Shown here piece after piece: positions 13,471-45,329 of a stretch of DNA of 64,000 bases. The notes beneath the pieces are model-generated. The model was not told where the DNA came from. It saw only the letters and a list, made by a program, of their open reading frames with translations, and searched no databases. The stretch spans positions 218,193-282,192 of IMG/VR virus record IMGVR_UViG_3300042562_001598; one strand, 5' to 3'. The stretch's first letter is position 1; every line of letters begins with the position of its first letter. The position numbers and the translations under genes were made by a program.

Positions 13471-15315
13471 ATGGGAGCATTATTAGAATCAGGTCTTGTT
13501 GGTAACATCGGACTAAAACACCTTAAAGTTATCAAAGAAGATACTATTAACAAATGGGATAAATTAGGATTCCTAGAAGGTCTTAAAGGACACTTAAGAG
13601 AAAACGTAGCTCAATTATATGAGAACCAAGCGTCTTTCTTGATTAACGAAGCTACTTCAGAAGGTTCATCAGGTTCATTTGAAACTGTTGTATTCCCTAT
13701 CGTAAGAAGAGTTTTCTCAAAATTATTGGCGAATGAAATCGTATCTGTACAAGCAATGAACTTACCAATTGGTAAATTGTTCTTCTTCGTACCTAAAATT
13801 CAAGGTTACAATGGTGGTGTTGAAGGTCAACAATCAGGTGACCACTACGCACCAATAGGTTCTCCAGGAAACTACTCAGGTAGTACAGAAGCTGGATATA
13901 CAGGTGCTGGAGCTTACGCTAAAAATCTTTATGATTTGTTTTATGAAGGTACTGAACCAGGATTGAACCCAGGTGGTTTATTTGATTACTCTAAAGGTAG
14001 ATGGTCAGCTATTACTTCTACAGTAGCTATTCAACAATGGTCTAATGGTAATTTAGTTGACGCTGTAATTTCTGGTACTTCAACAAGTGCTGGTGTTATT
14101 GCTGGAGGTAATACAAGAAAAGTAATTGTAAAACTTTGTGGTTTCCAAGATACTGGAGCTGGTAAATTAATTGGACCTGATGGAAATGAAATGGACACAG
14201 AAACTTTCTTGTCTGATTTAATTATCTACACTGGTTCTGGTTTAACAGTTGCCGCTGGTAGTCCATGTACAGTTTCAACAGGAGCTTTATTGTATAGAGT
14301 TGTTACTCAACAATATGGTCAAGGTATCGTAAATGGTGCTTCAGGAACTAGAACTCAAACTTCTTGGCCAACAAACAACGGTGGTTCATTCCAAAGTCCA
14401 TGTAACGCTAACGGATGTATCTTCTTAGAAGTTGATTTGTCTTGTCCAGCTTGTGCTGATTGTGGTTCTGATTCATTAGATGGATACACTGGAACAACTA
14501 TTTCTACAGGTTTAACTTCATCATCTTTCAACGCTGCTTGGAGACGTTACGAAGAATTAGAATTTGAAGATAAAATCGGTGAGGTTTCATTTGATTTAGA
14601 GTCTGTTACTGTATCTGTTACAGAAAGAAAATTAAGAGCACAATGGTCTCCTGAGTTAGCTCAAGACGTTGCAGCTTTCCATAACATTGATGCTGAAGCA
14701 GAATTAACTGCTTTGTTATCTGAACAAGTTGCGGCAGAGATTGACCGTGAAATCTTAAGAGATTTACGTAAAGGTGCTGCTTGGACTTTGAGATGGGATT
14801 ACAATGGATGGAGAAGAGTAGGAGCTACAACTTCTTATACACAAAAAGACTGGAACCAAACTTTGATTACAGCTATTAACCAATTGTCAGCACAAATTCA
14901 CAAATCTACTTTAAGAGGTGGTGCTAACTGGATTGTAGTTTCTTCTGAGGTTTCTGCTATCTTTGATGACTTAGAGTACTTCCACGTATCTAACGCTTCA
15001 GCTGAACAAGACCAATATAACATGGGTATTGAAAGAGTTGGAACATTAGCTGGTCGTTACCAAGTTTACCGTGACCCTTACTTCCCAGCTAACCAAGTGT
15101 TAATTGGACATAAAGGTACTTCATTGTTAGACACAGGTTATATCTACGCACCATACGTGCCGTTGCAATTAACTCCAACAATGTATAACCCTTTTAACTT
15201 TACTCCAATAAAAGGAATAATGACAAGGTATGCTAAAAAAATGGTAAACAACCGCTTTTACGCCCGAATTACTGTTGATGGTGTTAGAACATTTGATATT
15301 AAAGAATTAAGATAA
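13471..15315 (+). CDS. Major capsid protein (T4 gp23-like) with large insertion
   Basis: PIVRRVF...VSVQAM, RKLRAQWSPELAQD, DAEAEL, EIDREI, YAPYVPL, TRY motifs; strongly biased codon usage. Confidence 0.97.
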   Translation: MGALLESGLVGNIGLKHLKVIKEDTINKWDKLGFLEGLKGHLRENVAQLYENQASFLINEATSEGSSGSFETVVFPIVRRVFSKLLANEIVSVQAMNLPIGKLFFFVPKIQGYNGGVEGQQSGDHYAPIGSPGNYSGSTEAGYTGAGAYAKNLYDLFYEGTEPGLNPGGLFDYSKGRWSAITSTVAIQQWSNGNLVDAVISGTSTSAGVIAGGNTRKVIVKLCGFQDTGAGKLIGPDGNEMDTETFLSDLIIYTGSGLTVAAGSPCTVSTGALLYRVVTQQYGQGIVNGASGTRTQTSWPTNNGGSFQSPCNANGCIFLEVDLSCPACADCGSDSLDGYTGTTISTGLTSSSFNAAWRRYEELEFEDKIGEVSFDLESVTVSVTERKLRAQWSPELAQDVAAFHNIDAEAELTALLSEQVAAEIDREILRDLRKGAAWTLRWDYNGWRRVGATTSYTQKDWNQTLITAINQLSAQIHKSTLRGGANWIVVSSEVSAIFDDLEYFHVSNASAEQDQYNMGIERVGTLAGRYQVYRDPYFPANQVLIGHKGTSLLDTGYIYAPYVPLQLTPTMYNPFNFTPIKGIMTRYAKKMVNNRFYARITVDGVRTFDIKELR

Positions 15316-15337: not shown

Positions 15338-15368
15338 AAAGGGACAAGAAATTGTCCCTTTTTTTTTT
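15338..15368. terminator. Terminator between convergent MCP and endonuclease genes
   Basis: AAAGGGACAA-gaaa-TTGTCCCTTT plus long T-run. Confidence 0.85.
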
Positions 15369-16986
15369 ATAATAAAATTTCATATTTTAAATTACCGGTA
15401 TCCCATATTTTATCGTAACCTAATTCAGACATTATTTGAGATTCTGTTTTATTTTTATCATAACCTAACTTAACTAATCTATCTTTTCTATAGTTAAACC
15501 TATGTTCTCTAACATCATATTTTTTAGTATAACTATAATTAGGTTTTGTTTCCCCAATATAATTAAACCCTGTTTTAGAATAAAAACAAAATTCATCTGA
15601 AGGTGACCAATTTCTGTTAGAATATGTTATAATTTTTTTAGGTGAATATTCCTTTATAAAATGTTTTAATAATTTTGTAAATCCACCAACTACATTTACG
15701 GAACAATAACGATATAATTCATATTCATCTATAGTTTTATTTTTATTACCTAAAATTTTTCTTAATGAACCAAATGACATAACGGCAACAATAATATCAT
15801 TATGTTTTAGACCAAAGTATATTGTTGATTTATCATTACCTTGTAAATGGTTAGTCTTAAGAAAATTACTTTTTTCATCACTACTTATAGTTGTTATTTC
15901 ACAATTTCTCGCATAAATTTTAGTATTATTTTTCTTCAATAAATTAGTAATTCTATTTTTTACTATATTTTTCTTTGTTAACCATTCGTCAGAAAAAATA
16001 TGAATTAATTGAATGTTTTTTTCAAGACATTTTAATGTTTTATCTATATGATAATTTTTATGTTTCCCCCTATTTTCTGAGTGCCAATATAATCCATTAT
16101 ATTCTATAGCTATATTATAATCAGGAAAATACAAATCTAATTCAACACCATTTAATTGTTTCTTATCACAAACTTTAACATCAACACCTAATGATTTAAC
16201 ATATTCCTCAATTTCTTTTTCAGATTTACTTCTGTAGTAAAAATTAGTTTCACATTTTAATAAATTAGATACAAATGTGTCTTTTGTTTTTTTAGAAATT
16301 AAAGAGTTTTCGCCAAATTTATTTTTATATTCCTCGGTTGTTATATTATGTGATGACAAATGAGTGTTAGATAACATTTTAAATTGTTCGTCACATAATT
16401 CACAAGTGACATAATTATCTGTTTCATTAAATAACACATCTCTGTCAATAGAATTTGATAACGTTGTGAATAGTTTAAGTTCTGAAGGGAATTTTAACAC
16501 ATAATCACTAATTGAGTTGTGTGCGTTTTCAATATGTTTAGATAACGCCCCGGATTTATTAACAATATCTTTGGTGACCCATCCACATTCTAAACATTTT
16601 ATTGTTGTTGATTCCGGTTTAGTGATTAAATTAAAGTAAGTAAAATGCCAATAATTCCCAGTATCCGTTAAATACATTCTTCTTTTGAATGAAGATGGGA
16701 TAACTTCATTAGGGTAACATTTTTTAATATGATTAGTTACTCCACCACTTTTATTTTCAATGTCATCATATTCTTTACCACAACACTTACAAGATAGTAT
16801 AATATTTTTATTATCTAACTCAATCTTTTTGACCTGTTTATGTTTGATTTGACCACCTTTAGTTTTTAATGGTATGTTATTACTTAATAAAATTTTTTTA
16901 ATTTTAAGTTTACCAACCTTAAATTCTTTAGCCAAGGTCTCAATAGAGACATTATCTTTATACTTTTCAATTATTATATCTTCCAT
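15367..16986 (-). mobile_element. Free-standing Hef-like homing endonuclease with C2H2-type zinc fingers
   Basis: Three CxxC...H fingers; S..EKE, ELDLY, AIEYNGLYWHS, HIFSDEW, KIYAR.C, NHLQG, KIWDTG motifs; oriented opposite to flanking genes. Confidence 0.85.
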
Positions 16987-42457: not shown

Positions 42458-43639
42458 TTAAACACTAAACACTTTTTCTACAACATGATTGTAAAAGTCT
42501 TTTCTGGCTTCAGTTACTTTTGTTAAGTCATAACGGTCTTTTACAGTTTCGTATAATCTTTCACCCATATCGGTAATCAATCCAGGGTTTTCAACTAATT
42601 TTTTTATACTTTTTGACCAATCGCTATGGTTTCTTGTTTCCGGAACTAAGATAGCATTTCCATCTGTAAAATTACCATTAGTTAAACAATGTTTCAAATC
42701 AATTGTGTAAGGACCGATTTCAGAAGCGATTAACGCTTTTTTGTAGAAGCCAGCTTCAATAACTTTCAATTGAGATTTCATTCTGTTAAAGATATGGTTT
42801 TTAATCGGTGCCAAAGATATGTCAAATTTTGAATAATTCATAGCATAACTTGTAACTGGTTTTGTCCATACTCTTGAATAAGGTAATGTTTCATCAGTAA
42901 CATAATTTGTGTCCTTAAAATTCAATAAGTGTTTCTTGTAATCGTCACCAACAATTTTATAATTATTTGTGAATAATTCCTCATATCTTGCCCACACCGT
43001 TTCGTGAGGTAAAATATCTCTTCTTTTTTCTTCACGAGTTTCAGGATTAATTTCCGTTACAGTTCCTCTTGTATCAAAACCACAAAGAACATATTGGATT
43101 TTATCGTTAATCTGTGAATTTTTGTTGACAAATCCTTCCAACAACATCAAATCGTGTAAGTGAGAACTTCCACCTAACCAACCAACTCTGATTCTATCAG
43201 ATGGTAAAGTTTTTTCCTTGAACTGTGGTTCATTTGGGTTAATAGCATTTGGAAATACAATTACATTTTTATTAACCTTACGGATTTCATCAGCAAAAAT
43301 TTCAGTAGTTGTTGTAACATAACTTGCTTCTCTCAAGTTAGCAACAATCTTTTCGTGGATTTTATGTTGAACAATAATTGAGTGAATTGGGTGTTCCTTA
43401 GTTGGTAACCAATAATCGTCAATATCAAATATAACCACAATACCCATTGATTTTAATTGTCTAATCAATAAAGGTGTTGTTTCGTAAGTATTACCGATAT
43501 TTCTATGAACATGGACGATTTGGTATTTTGACCAATAAGACATATCATTTATTCTCGGTTCATAGTCAATATCCACATGGAAGTCATCTGGATACATATT
43601 TTGTAACATTGTGTGAGGGTCAATAGAGCGAAATTTACC
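42458..43639 (-). CDS. GT-B glycosyltransferase, main (3') reading frame
   Basis: FDIDDYW, PNAI, GWLGGSSHLHDL, DISLAP, FN..KS.LK.IE; frame is open upstream of ATG 43609 as GKFRSIDPHT. Confidence 0.85.
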   Translation of the reverse strand, partial: GKFRSIDPHTMLQNMYPDDFHVDIDYEPRINDMSYWSKYQIVHVHRNIGNTYETTPLLIRQLKSMGIVVIFDIDDYWLPTKEHPIHSIIVQHKIHEKIVANLREASYVTTTTEIFADEIRKVNKNVIVFPNAINPNEPQFKEKTLPSDRIRVGWLGGSSHLHDLMLLEGFVNKNSQINDKIQYVLCGFDTRGTVTEINPETREEKRRDILPHETVWARYEELFTNNYKIVGDDYKKHLLNFKDTNYVTDETLPYSRVWTKPVTSYAMNYSKFDISLAPIKNHIFNRMKSQLKVIEAGFYKKALIASEIGPYTIDLKHCLTNGNFTDGNAILVPETRNHSDWSKSIKKLVENPGLITDMGERLYETVKDRYDLTKVTEARKDFYNHVVEKVFSV

Positions 43640-43725
43640 TAACCTACCCCTGAGCGGTCAGACGCGAGTACTAAAACTCTTATCTTTTCACGACCATTCA
43701 GGGGCTGAATTGTTGTTTGTTGCAT
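43639..43725 (-). CDS. 28-aa N-terminal segment of the same glycosyltransferase, in a different frame
   Basis: MQQTTIQPLNGREKIRVLVLASDRSGVG* reads as the first beta-strand and Gly loop of a GT-B fold; removing one TAGGT copy yields ...SDRSGVGKFRSIDPH... Confidence 0.75.
   Translation of the reverse strand: MQQTTIQPLNGREKIRVLVLASDRSGVG
43647..43704 (-). other. GC-rich RNA stem-loop abutting the frame break
   Basis: mRNA arms CCCCUGAAUGGUC (43704-43692) and GACCGCUCAGGGG (43659-43647) pair 12/13 including one GU. Confidence 0.7.
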
Positions 43726-44611
43726 ACTTGTTTATTATTAGTATTAGTTTATCATTATTAGACTTGAGTTCATTCTCCCAAATCACTTCTAAATTATAAC
43801 CATAACTTTTGACTAAATCAAGTTTTTTTTTATCATAGTCCCACAACTCCCAAGCATATTTATTTTTTTTAGCATTAAAATAATCTTTTGAATATTTGAT
43901 TGGATTACAATGCCAATAATCTCCAAAGTATTCAATTATCAAATTGAGTGAAGGTATATAGATATCACATATTTTACTATCAACTCTATAGGATTGTATT
44001 GCCTCTACCCCCATTTCAGTTAGTAATTCTATTATTTCTTTTTCTTTTTTTGAGGTTATACCCGAATTTAATTTTCCTTTTCTTTGATTTTGTTTCATAA
44101 GTTCAGACATTGTATCTCTATCCCAGATATTATTATCCCAATTAGACCTAGCAATACCCCTACTCATTTGTCGGTATTTTTCTTGTTTCATGTGATTATC
44201 GTAACCAGTGTATTTATTAGTTCTACTCTCCGATATTTGTTTAATAGTACTTTCTTTATGTTTTTTACCGTAAAATGGGTTGTTCTCACCTAAATTACAT
44301 TTACCCATACACTTTTTACAATTACTATTGTCTCGTAATTTATTAAAGTGATTTCTACACGCAATAGTACTTTGTTTAGAATAAGTCTTAATTTCTTCCT
44401 TACACATTGGACATAATCTTGCAACATAAAAATTTTCCCCCTCTTTTACAATATCTAAAGATTTACATCTATCTCGTTGTCTCACTAAATTGTGTTTATG
44501 CAAAATAGCTAAAATAGTATGTTTTGGGACACCCGTCATTTTAGATATTATAATACTTCCATTTCCCTTTTTATATTCAGATATGATTTTTTCTTCAATT
44601 TCTATATTCAT
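43688..44611 (-). mobile_element. Free-standing homing endonuclease (NUMOD3 plus Vsr/DUF559-like nuclease)
   Basis: GENNPFYGKKH (NUMOD3), CxxC pairs, S..EKE, CDIYIP..NLIIEYFGDYWHCNP, IWE. Confidence 0.85.
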
Positions 44612-44671
44612 AATATATGTTGTTTTATTATAAATAGTCCGGTTCTATCAAAAGGAACAATATTATAAAAT

Positions 44672-44703
44672 AAAAAACCCAACCTTAATTAAAAGATTGG
44701 GTT
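44672..44703 (-). terminator. Rho-independent terminator
   Basis: Minus strand AACCCAATCTT...AAGGTTGGGTTTTTT. Confidence 0.75.
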
Positions 44704-44723
44704 CTTAAAAATAAAAAATATGT

Positions 44724-45329
44724 TTAAGCTATTTTTTTAATTTTTGTTACTTTCCCCTCAAAGATATGTTTTCCTACTTTGAAAGAAAAAACCTCATTTG
44801 ATTTAGTTGTTGATTCGGTTAATAGACCATTTTCTGCTAAAACTTCCTCAATTGTTTCTCTAATCATTTTTTTCAACTCATTAGTAGATGGTGCTGAAGT
44901 TACTTGTTCTTGAACAGGTCTCTTAGTCGTTGTTGGAGTTATTTGGTCACCATTTGCGTTAACATTCATTAACCTAGCAGCTTTCTCAATTACATCATTT
45001 GATAATGTTGTTCCGCCACCCATACTTGTTGGTTGAGCTATAGGGTGTTCAATCATTAATTGTTTAATAGCGTCAGGTAATTTAGATGACATAACTCTAT
45101 CTCTAGTTAATGGTTGTTGTGTTGTTGGTGGAGTATATGTTGACGGAGCAACATTCTCCATTAAATCTTGTGGTAAGTTATAGGTTGCTGGAGGAGCATC
45201 ATAAGTTGCTACATTAATACTTTCATTAATATTAGGGTTAGTAATACCATTTCTACCCATAGTATTATGTTTATCCATAATTTGTTTGGATACCATTAAT
45301 TTTTTGATTAAATCGTCTTCACTATTCAT
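44724..45329 (-). CDS. Hypothetical protein
   Basis: 201-aa ORF in operon; several L/I-x-E motifs. Confidence 0.65.
   Translation of the reverse strand: MNSEDDLIKKLMVSKQIMDKHNTMGRNGITNPNINESINVATYDAPPATYNLPQDLMENVAPSTYTPPTTQQPLTRDRVMSSKLPDAIKQLMIEHPIAQPTSMGGGTTLSNDVIEKAARLMNVNANGDQITPTTTKRPVQEQVTSAPSTNELKKMIRETIEEVLAENGLLTESTTKSNEVFSFKVGKHIFEGKVTKIKKIA

What the first reader, a model, noticed from the sequence alone, without database searches (positions are those of the whole stretch)
43647..44636. Homing endonuclease overlaps and may have rebuilt the 5' end of its neighbour gene
Seen: the endonuclease's last codons (YATNNNSAPEWS*) overlap the GT start by 38 nt and encode the 5' arm of the stem; its UGA lies in the loop. 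The GT's first codons include GC-rich ones unusual here (CCC CTG, CTC GCG, CGC, GGG). The endonuclease has its own TATTTAT just after a terminator, so it heads the downstream glycan/dut transcript. Inference: the element supplied a recoded, cleavage-resistant GT 5' end and the promoter, making it hard to lose. Ribosomes finishing the endonuclease would melt the stem, coupling the two genes.
Basis: partly seen in the sequence, partly recalled or inferred. Interest (0 to 1): 0.65.

Follow-up and report, generated by a model that had tools for sequence, protein, structure and literature searches.

The report
Homing endonuclease with ribosome-hop cassette
A mobile endonuclease gene in a 282-kb lake phage has replaced the start of the neighbouring glycosyltransferase gene with its own version, which holds a stop codon and a frameshift between two identical glycine codons; ribosomes most likely hop over this, making it a second, independent natural case of the trick known from phage T4 gene 60.

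Summary
The glycosyltransferase (GT) frame that starts at ATG 43725 stops after 28 codons at TAG 43641-43639, and the other 392 codons lie in another frame. The break reads GGT-TA-GGT.

About 50 related metagenomic loci interrupt the same GT at the same residue. Each has a sense codon, then a stop at once, then 0-6 further G-free bases (once 41 nt in all), then a matching codon. Hop lengths are 5, 6, 9, 11, 12 or 44 nt, all three stop codons occur, and one locus has AGC/AGC.

- Every fully covered copy keeps an intact 385-423-aa downstream frame, including at least five lineages where the endonuclease has decayed or gone.
- All 32 distinct short-gap alleles have a covarying hairpin (-22 to -34 kcal/mol) that ends 0-2 nt before the take-off codon. 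Endonuclease-free alleles have none (mean -5.6).
- The 5' segment is 92-100% identical between loci whose GT bodies are saturated in synonymous changes, so the cassette moves.

Best reading: a homing endonuclease plus programmed translational-bypass cassette, analogous but not homologous to T4 mobA/gene 60. This rests on computation only; no protein evidence exists.

The parts
44673..44706 (-). Intrinsic-terminator-like hairpin ending the upstream gene (44724..45329). It lies outside the cassette and is shared with endonuclease-free relatives.
   Evidence: comparison with L003
43637..44658 (-). Extent of the mobile cassette: leader motif, endonuclease gene, GT 5' segment with hairpin, gap and landing codon.
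   Evidence: An endonuclease-free form joins 43636 to 44659. Identity to L003 is 57% inside and about 90% outside the right boundary.
44630..44652 (-). Conserved leader motif TTTGAT-N-TATTTAT upstream of the endonuclease start. It may be a promoter or operator; its function is untested.
   Evidence: Kept in 12 of 13 related cassettes. It is the only match upstream of a gene in the window, and the count is no higher than chance.
43688..44611 (-). Free-standing homing endonuclease, 307 aa: N-terminal helix-turn-helix, zinc finger plus NUMOD3 (I-TevI-like DNA-binding part), and a C-terminal EDxHD/Vsr-like PD-(D/E)xK nuclease.
   Evidence: alignment A2; dN/dS 0.14-0.41
43642..43725 (-). GT segment 1: 28 codons from ATG 43725 to the take-off codon GGT 43644-43642. 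It includes a 10-aa N-terminal extension absent from endonuclease-free GTs.
43646..43705 (-). 5' hairpin whose 3' arm ends 1 nt before the take-off codon.
   Evidence: It is present with covariation in all 32 distinct short-gap alleles and absent from endonuclease-free alleles.
43637..43644 (-). Hop site: take-off GGT (43644-42), gap TA (43641-40), landing GGT (43639-37). The stop TAG is 43641-39.
   Evidence: the same grammar in about 50 loci
42458..43636 (-). GT segment 2: 392 codons plus stop, from the resume codon AAA (Lys19 of the uninterrupted protein). The fold is GT-B, GT4-like.

Best explanation
This is a mobile cassette: a free-standing homing endonuclease gene, a replacement 5' end for the downstream GT gene, and a short untranslated gap inside that GT.

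Inferred: the endonuclease cuts endonuclease-free GT alleles near the conserved GVG|KFRS coding site. Repair then copies the cassette in, with its right boundary at the landing codon. The gap splits the target and protects carriers from being cut again.

Inferred from the anatomy: the GT is still made whole. A ribosome translates the 28 codons of segment 1 and stalls with peptidyl-tRNA-Gly on GGT and a stop codon in the A site. The tRNA unpairs, the mRNA slides 5 nt (5-12 nt in relatives, 44 in one), and the tRNA re-pairs with the matching GGT. Decoding resumes at AAA, which gives the normal ...GVGKFRS... protein.

More speculative: the hairpin, whose 3' arm sits inside the ribosome at take-off, refolds behind the ribosome and pulls the mRNA forward, as proposed for the 5' stem-loop of T4 gene 60.
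For: 1. Grammar. About 50 loci share a sense codon, then a stop at once, then a short gap, then a codon with the same first two bases (identical amino acid). The forms are GGT-TA-GGT, AGC-TG-AGC, GGT TAA GG(A/C/T), GGC or GGT TGA GGT, GGT TAACCA GGC, GGT TAAATCAA GGT and GGT TAACCAACA or TAACAAAAC GGT. One locus has GGT followed by a 41-nt gap (GCT, TAA, a hairpin, an AT-rich tail) and then GGT. All three stop codons occur, so this is not a code change. Four forms change frame (5, 5, 11 and 44 nt), so readthrough cannot serve them. In the short gaps no G follows the stop, so there are no premature landing sites.

2. Coding capacity. Every fully covered interrupted GT has an intact 385-423-aa downstream frame, and there is no start codon near the break in most.

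3. Endonuclease decay. At least five lineages have a decayed or lost endonuclease but keep the gap, the hairpin and an intact GT: L069/L135/L148, L165, L186/L196, L168 and L385.

4. Selection within the gap-bearing line. Between the window and another-study contig that also carries the 5-nt gap, 8 of the 9 listed GT differences are synonymous. GT dN/dS is 0.04-0.2 between most gap-bearing loci, higher (0.3-0.4) against the divergent L020.

5. Hairpin. It scores -22 to -34 kcal/mol in all 32 distinct short-gap alleles and closes 0-2 nt before take-off. Pairs covary: position -4 is C-G, G-C or U-A, and position -7 shows six pair types. The 29 endonuclease-free alleles average -5.6, with -13.9 the strongest. 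Endonuclease-bearing alleles without a gap have no such stem.

6. Mobility. The 100 nt before the landing codon are 92-100% identical between most pairs tested whose GT bodies have dS 0.8-1.5. Endonuclease dS is lower than GT dS in close pairs.

7. Position in the protein. The break lies in the loop between strand 1 and helix 1 of a GT4-like GT-B fold, and the KFRS that follows is invariant, so a product lacking segment 1 should be inactive.

8. Precedent. In T4, a homing endonuclease (mobA) and the gene 60 bypass form one mobile element, and the insert blocks self-cleavage. Pairing of exiting mRNA is proposed to drive forward movement. Synthetic 'stop-hops' between matched codons work in E. 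coli.
Against: - There is no protein, ribosome-profiling or reporter evidence.
- Unstimulated stop-hops in E. coli are described as low-level, so efficiency here rests on unproven stimulators.
- Because the cassette moves between GT backgrounds, most of the purifying selection seen in GT bodies could predate its arrival. The within-lineage test rests on 9 listed differences from a truncated table.
- The window's hairpin alone is only modestly better than shuffles (z = -2.35).
- The host is unknown.
- The 41-nt variant is a single 4.9-kb contig.
Confidence: 0.65

Rival explanations
1. Selfish knock-out. The insertion exists only to destroy the endonuclease's own target. The GT is inactivated on invasion and is dispensable. 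Intact downstream frames only reflect recent, repeated homing into live GT genes.
For: The cassette is clearly mobile relative to the GT body. Endonuclease-bearing alleles without a gap exist (L036, L037, L042, L044, L047, L053, L375, L378, L381), so a gap is not the only route to coexistence.
Against: - A target-breaking insertion needs no stop codon, no matched flanking codons, no G-free interior and no hairpin, yet all are kept while gap length and sequence drift.
- No extra lesions occur in the fully covered interrupted GTs.
- At least five lineages lost the endonuclease, which takes time, yet the GT frame stayed open.
- 8 of 9 listed differences within the 5-nt-gap lineage are synonymous.
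Confidence: 0.17
2. Mixed mechanisms. In-frame gaps (6, 9 and 12 nt) are passed by stop-codon readthrough, which adds 2-4 residues. The out-of-frame ones (window, L020, L007, L385) are dead or use some other frameshift.
For: Most loci have in-frame gaps. One gene caller read TGA as Trp to obtain P0018.
Against: - The out-of-frame forms arise in separate endonuclease clades and keep intact GT frames.
- L007 (11 nt) and L008/L009 (12 nt) sit in one tight clade.
- The sites have no slippery sequence for a -1 or +2 shift.
- Readthrough does not explain matched codons or AGC/AGC.
- All three stop codons are used.
Confidence: 0.08
3. Split protein. A 28-aa peptide and a separately initiated C-terminal fragment assemble into an active GT, as in genes split by MobE or MobA.
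For: The window has an ATG ten codons after the break, at 43609. Phage genes split by homing endonucleases that still work are known.
Against: Most relatives have no ATG, GTG or TTG near the break; they read HVF, HIF or HVH there. A 28-aa piece that supplies one strand of a Rossmann sheet is an unlikely stable partner. This model needs neither matched codons nor the hairpin.
Confidence: 0.05
4. Sequencing or assembly artefact at the TAGGT repeat.
For: Short tandem repeats can be mis-assembled.
Against: The same sequence occurs in independent assemblies from other studies, and 18 runs hold at least half of the sampled words. The same type of break occurs in about 50 other contigs.
Confidence: 0.01

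Closest known systems
Phage T4 mobA / gene 60 bypass cassette (bioRxiv 10.1101/2022.08.31.505936; 10.1101/2024.12.09.627546)
   Same: - A homing endonuclease sits directly upstream of the gene it invades, and the cassette brings a new N-terminal segment plus an untranslated gap.
- Take-off is on a Gly codon, a stop follows at once, and the landing codon matches.
- The gap interior lacks landing triplets, and mRNA structure lies 5' of take-off.
- The endonuclease decays while the gap persists.
- The same site is invaded repeatedly.
   Different: - There is no sequence homology. The target is a GT4-like glycosyltransferase, not topoisomerase.
- The nuclease is EDxHD/Vsr-like, whereas T4 MobA is an HNH-type enzyme (from my own knowledge).
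- Gaps are 2-9 nt (one of 41) rather than about 47-50 nt.
- The hairpin abuts the take-off codon, whereas the T4 5' stem-loop ends 9 nt before it.
- There is no evident take-off stem-loop or mini-SD in the short forms.
- The 2022 preprint describes the gene 60 cassette as still unique and confined to Topo2L.
Synthetic 'stop-hops' in E. coli (Weiss et al. 1987, as cited in PMC5009743)
   Same: Matched codons flank a stop codon, and hops of +5 and +6 nt are reported. This is the exact geometry of the window (5 nt) and of most relatives (6 nt).
   Different: Those were engineered, low-level events without stimulators. The 2016 review states that no natural in-frame stop hopping is known. Here the sites are natural, conserved and paired with a hairpin.
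Intronless homing by free-standing phage endonucleases (Seg and Mob proteins of T-even phages; review PMC2988022, listed but not read)
   Same: An endonuclease gene lies between conserved genes, is sporadic among relatives, and carries flanking polymorphisms in with it.
   Different: In the cases I know, immunity comes from substitutions in the target, not from an interrupting gap. This statement is from my own knowledge.
I-Bth0305I / EDxHD and Vsr-like homing endonucleases (PDB 3r3p, 1vsr; family first noted in PMC2677866)
   Same: The best structural match of the C-terminal domain is 3r3p (TM by target 0.75, 26% identity), followed by Vsr. An invariant E..GD..WH block is present.
   Different: The domain set is different: a helix-turn-helix plus an I-TevI-like zinc finger and NUMOD3 in front. 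No Pfam nuclease family reaches threshold.
Other proposed natural bypasses: Magnusiomyces mitochondrial byps and the Streptomyces phage Hau3 terminase (PMC5009743, PMC10732093)
   Same: Coding gaps are skipped between matched codons after a slow-to-decode codon.
   Different: The hosts, gap lengths and triggers differ (a rare UUA codon in Streptomyces), and no homing endonuclease is linked.

Membership tests
Programmed translational bypassing (gene 60 type) | Take-off and landing codons that one peptidyl-tRNA can pair with | tested here: met
   All 11 distinct gap forms share the first two bases and the amino acid, and AGC/AGC covaries in L020. GGT/GGA pairs need relaxed third-base pairing.
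Programmed translational bypassing (gene 60 type) | A stop or slow codon directly 3' of the take-off codon | tested here: met
   TAA, TAG or TGA follows at once in every short-gap locus. In L385 the stop is one codon later.
Programmed translational bypassing (gene 60 type) | The two frames together encode one conserved protein, and the second has no start of its own | tested here: met
   Joined at the matched codon, the product equals uninterrupted homologues (GVGKFRS). Most loci lack a nearby start codon.
Programmed translational bypassing (gene 60 type) | Stimulatory mRNA structure | tested here: inconclusive
   A conserved, covarying 5' hairpin is strictly linked to the gap, but its effect on ribosomes is not measured.
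Programmed translational bypassing (gene 60 type) | Nascent-peptide signal | not testable with these tools
   A 10-aa N-terminal extension with a kept P-x-(N/D)-(G/H/V)-R is present, but it also encodes the 5' arm of the hairpin.
Programmed translational bypassing (gene 60 type) | A single polypeptide spanning the gap is observed | not testable with these tools
   This needs mass spectrometry or a reporter.
T4 mobA/gene 60 element (homology) | Sequence relationship to MobA, Topo2L and the 50-nt cassette | tested here: not met
   The target gene is different (GT4-like) and so is the nuclease fold (3r3p/Vsr). The resemblance is analogy, not membership.
Free-standing homing endonuclease | A nuclease domain plus sequence-tolerant DNA-binding modules | tested here: met
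   NUMOD3 2.2e-07; I-TevI DNA-binding domain 1i3j; nuclease matches 3r3p and Vsr; phrog_559 and phrog_3339.
Free-standing homing endonuclease | Sporadic presence at one site among close relatives, and mobility relative to the flanks | tested here: met
   117 of the 120 best GT homologues are uninterrupted and start with the native short N-terminus; the three checked at DNA level (L003-L005) lack the endonuclease. Among 77 GT loci, 10 have an endonuclease. The cassette is 92-100% identical where GT dS is 0.8-1.5.
Free-standing homing endonuclease | Cleaves the endonuclease-free allele and spares its own | not testable with these tools
   Indirect hint only: alleles that carry the endonuclease without a gap often have Ser (TCA or TCG) in place of the Gly codon (L037, L378, L381).
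GT4-like GT-B glycosyltransferase | Two-Rossmann GT-B fold | tested here: met
   Model pLDDT 82, pTM 0.82. Top matches are GlgM, HepE, PglA, MshA, BshA and PimA. Pfam gives no hit; phrog_7162 does.

The most novel reading that the evidence does not exclude
This is the first natural family of short-range programmed ribosome hops ('stop-hops' of 5-12 nt, with one 44-nt relative). It is carried as the immunity module of a homing-endonuclease cassette that evolved independently of T4 mobA/gene 60. It is driven by a 'spring' hairpin whose 3' arm is held inside the ribosome at take-off.
Probability: 0.55. Interest if true: 0.9.

Novelty: new variant of a known kind. Interest (0 to 1): 0.82.

Why it matters
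- Programmed bypassing in phages has rested mainly on one family, T4 gene 60 and its homologues, plus one Streptomyces phage candidate. Its origin and its link to homing endonucleases have been puzzling.
- An independent cassette with the same logic, in another gene and with another nuclease, would show that 'endonuclease plus untranslated gap' is a recurring solution to the self-cleavage problem.
- It offers a natural series of gap lengths (2 to 41 nt) with a simple hairpin. That makes a compact system for testing how exiting-mRNA pairing drives ribosome sliding.
- It would supply the natural stop-hops that a 2016 review says had long been presumed but never found.
- Standard gene callers truncate or mis-code these genes. 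One caller invoked TGA=Trp. Similar sites may be hidden in phage metagenomes.

Tried and rejected
- Searching phage GenBank records with the region gave only a 49-nt match in Bacillus phage AR9. It was of no use.
- RNAalifold on the MAFFT alignment of 32 alleles returned no consensus. The 5' arm pairs in a register shifted by one column between clades. I replaced it with per-sequence folds anchored on the codon-aligned 3' arm.
- The pattern for the window's exact junction found no GT context elsewhere in IMG/VR. The pattern GCCCCTGAAYGGTCG was too unspecific. The pattern for the 41-nt variant found only its own contig.
- I considered an internal Shine-Dalgarno-like stimulator (GGGG or GGAG, 2 nt before take-off, as in prfB) and dropped it. 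Endonuclease-free alleles have GGTGTT or GGAGTT at the same place, so the G-rich run is not special to gap alleles. Gene leaders in this phage also show no SD.
- The idea that TTTGAT...TATTTAT is a general promoter of this phage was not supported: 2 matches against 2.7 expected.
- Alternative genetic codes were not used. All three stop codons occur at the site, and the window needs a frame change.
- dN/dS between gap-bearing GTs cannot by itself prove selection in the interrupted state, because the cassette moves between backgrounds.

Full report
**Setting.** The window is the last 64 kb of a 282,192-bp IMG/VR virus record, 30% GC and estimated 96% complete. It carries terminase, portal and major head genes, so it is a tailed jumbo phage. 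The runs that hold it are mostly lake-water metagenomes. The finding lies in a minus-strand block: an unknown 201-aa gene with a terminator, the endonuclease, the GT, a 3'-5' exonuclease, dUTPase and a double GT2 glycosyltransferase.

**What is in the sequence.** The endonuclease ORF is 44611..43688 (307 aa). An ATG at 43725, 38 nt inside its 3' end, opens a frame that reads MQQTTIQPLNGREKIRVLVLASDRSGVG. This frame stops at TAG 43641-43639. The remainder of the GT, KFRSIDPHTMLQN... for 392 codons, lies in another frame (43636..42461).

The junction is GGT TA GGT AAA. Removing five bases, or moving a tRNA-Gly from the first GGT to the second, gives ...GVGKFRS.... That is exactly what 117 of the 120 best homologues encode without interruption. 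A standard ORF caller instead reports a 383-aa product from an internal ATG at 43609, which lacks the first strand of the fold.

The break is not an artefact. Contigs from other studies reproduce it, one without a single difference across 43398-44800. A 6.9-kb contig has 50 substitutions and no indel there. Two contigs from RNA libraries also span it unchanged, so nothing suggests removal at the RNA level, although DNA carry-over cannot be excluded.

**The same device in many relatives.** I searched with the endonuclease protein, with an alignment of its relatives, with junction patterns and with the GT protein. Together these gave about 50 loci in which the same GT is interrupted at the same residue.

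| Take-off | Gap | Landing | Hop (nt) | Loci |
|---|---|---|---|---|
| GGT | TA | GGT | 5 | window |
| AGC | TG | AGC | 5 | L020 |
| GGT | TAA | GGA, GGC or GGT | 6 | many |
| GGC or GGT | TGA | GGT | 6 | many |
| GGT | TAACCA | GGC | 9 | L038 |
| GGT | TAAATCAA | GGT | 11 | L007 |
| GGT | TAACCAACA or TAACAAAAC | GGT | 12 | L008-L011 |
| GGT | 41 nt (GCT, TAA, strong hairpin, AT-rich tail) | GGT | 44 | L385 |

- In every short form a stop codon follows the first codon at once.
- The flanking codons always specify the same amino acid with the same first two bases.
- No G follows the stop inside the short gaps.
- All three stop codons occur, so no reassigned code explains the sites.
- Four forms change the reading frame.
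- L007 (11 nt) and L008/L009 (12 nt) belong to one tight endonuclease clade. Gap length therefore drifts across frame boundaries while the grammar stays.

**Is the GT still a live gene?**
- Every interrupted GT with full coverage has an open downstream frame of 385-423 codons and no further lesion.
- At least five lineages have lost the endonuclease but keep the extension, the hairpin, the gap and an intact GT. L069/L135/L148 have a large N-terminal deletion plus a frameshift. L165, L186/L196 and L385 keep only a C-terminal remnant. L168 has no trace at all.
- Between the window and another-study contig with the same 5-nt gap, 8 of the 9 listed GT differences are synonymous third-position changes. 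The table was truncated, so this is indicative only.
- GT dN/dS is 0.04 against the endonuclease-free L003, and 0.07-0.23 between most gap-bearing loci (0.3-0.4 against the divergent L020). Because the cassette moves (below), these values cannot be assigned wholly to the interrupted state.
- The break lies in the loop between strand 1 (residues 5-10) and helix 1 (24-32) of a confident GT-B model. Its best structural matches are GT4 enzymes (GlgM, HepE, PglA, MshA, BshA, PimA), and KFRS is invariant. A product without segment 1 would lack a core strand.

**The hairpin.** Each of the 32 distinct short-gap alleles folds into a long-range hairpin of -22 to -34 kcal/mol over the 72 nt before the take-off codon. 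Its 3' arm ends 0-2 nt before that codon.
- The arms covary between clades: CCCCUGA/UCAGGGG, AACGCCC/GGGCGUU, CUCCGG/CCGGAG and AACCUCGG/CCGGGGUU. L385 has GACGCC/GGCGUC.
- Anchored on the 3' arm, position -4 is C-G, G-C or U-A, and position -7 shows six pair types.
- The 29 distinct endonuclease-free alleles average -5.6 kcal/mol, with -13.9 the strongest.
- Endonuclease-bearing alleles without a gap also lack the stem, including L036 and L037, which do have an N-terminal extension.

The hairpin therefore goes with the gap, not with the endonuclease. The 5' arm is encoded by the 10-aa N-terminal extension that only cassette alleles have.

At take-off the 3' arm must lie inside the ribosome. 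Refolding behind the ribosome would draw mRNA out of the exit side, which moves the ribosome forward. This is the role proposed for the 5' stem-loop and extended stem-loop of gene 60. For this locus it is inference.

**The endonuclease and its mobility.**
- Pfam finds NUMOD3 and a helix-turn-helix.
- A profile of 13 relatives matches the DNA-binding domain of I-TevI.
- The C-terminal domain gives sub-threshold MTES_1575 hits. In an AlphaFold model it matches the catalytic domain of I-Bth0305I (TM by target 0.75) and then Vsr.
- The relatives are 46-63% identical to the window's protein, all full-length ones are open, and dN/dS is 0.14-0.41.
- Between most pairs of loci tested, the 100 nt before the landing codon are 92-100% identical while the GT body has dS of 0.8-1.5. 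For example, L182 against L188 is 100% identical upstream and 75% identical in GT protein. Endonuclease dS is below GT dS in close pairs.
- Against the endonuclease-free L003, identity drops from about 90% to 57% exactly at the landing codon. An endonuclease-free form joins 43636 to 44659.

These are the marks of homing with a fixed right boundary. On the endonuclease tree, the alleles without a gap form two clades nested among gap-bearing ones. The gap is therefore old in this family and has been lost or replaced at least twice, unless it was gained repeatedly. Three of those alleles carry Ser (TCA or TCG) at the take-off position. This hints that this codon lies in the recognition site.

**Comparison with what is known.** The closest system is T4 mobA/gene 60. 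Shared traits are an endonuclease just upstream, a new N-terminal segment, a Gly take-off, an adjacent stop, a matched landing codon, an insert that blocks self-cleavage, and decay of the endonuclease with the bypass retained. The 2022 survey of that element found it only in topoisomerase genes and called the cassette unique.

The present element shares none of its sequences. The target gene and the nuclease fold differ, the gaps are far shorter, and the structure abuts the take-off codon. It is an analogue, not a member.

The short forms have the geometry of the engineered +5 and +6 'stop-hops' of Weiss et al. 1987. The 2016 review says no natural in-frame stop hopping is known and that shorter counterparts of gene 60 had long been presumed. 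Three full-text searches found no description of this GT cassette. The library does not cover subscription journals.

**Verdict.** The central feature is a conserved, mobile, stop-containing gap flanked by matched codons and preceded by a covarying hairpin. The best explanation is programmed translational bypassing that keeps the GT functional while protecting the cassette from its own nuclease (confidence about 0.65). The main rival is a tolerated knock-out of a dispensable gene (about 0.17). All evidence is comparative, and a reporter and mass-spectrometry test would decide.

Noticed in passing
L385 (= L389), K codon at 1356; take-off GGT 1309-1311: A 41-nt-gap version of the same device. 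The gap holds a strong internal hairpin and an AT-rich tail, only an endonuclease remnant is left, and the 387-aa GT frame is intact. The fold has z = -4.24, and no shuffle of 200 folds as well. It is a single 4.9-kb contig in IMG/VR.
   Followed up: partly
G000:C1:194183-201749 (outside the window): The phage carries 13 tRNA genes. They include tRNA-Gly(UCC) at 200311-200383 and an odd tRNA with a 6-nt anticodon loop at 200570-200641. A phage tRNA-Gly(UCC) could bear on GGT to GGA hops; this is speculative.
   Followed up: partly
window 15367-16986 (-): A second, larger homing endonuclease (539 aa; phrog_3339 2e-101, phrog_559) lies just downstream of the major head gene (13471-15315). It shares a weak nuclease-domain match with the endonuclease studied here.
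   Followed up: no
L037, L378, L381 (also L036, L042, L044, L047, L053, L375): Alleles that carry the endonuclease but no gap. Three have Ser (TCA or TCG) instead of Gly at the take-off position. This may be another way to alter the presumed target.
   Followed up: partly
window 44017-44159 (within the endonuclease gene): A contig of another study differs from the window at 25 positions within 143 nt here, spread evenly over codon positions, but at only 9 listed positions in the whole GT. It looks like a recombination patch in the endonuclease's middle region.
   Followed up: no
window 44630-44652 and the equivalent place in L007-L034: A motif CCTTTTGAT, 7-13 nt, TATTTAT lies 15-35 nt upstream of the endonuclease start in 12 of 13 cassettes. 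A shorter look-alike (TTTTGATTATCATTTAT) precedes the GT in the endonuclease-free L003.
   Followed up: partly
L006, L034, L172, L186, L188 and other TGA-type loci: In TGA-type alleles the take-off codon and the stop (GGCUGAG) can pair with the downstream UCAGU/CUCGGUC, forming a small hairpin that starts at the take-off codon. This recalls the gene 60 take-off stem-loop. It is absent from the window.
   Followed up: no
P0018, P0031, P0032 in the protein collection: Public gene calls for interrupted GTs were produced by reading TGA as Trp. This is an annotation artefact that hides such sites.
   Followed up: yes
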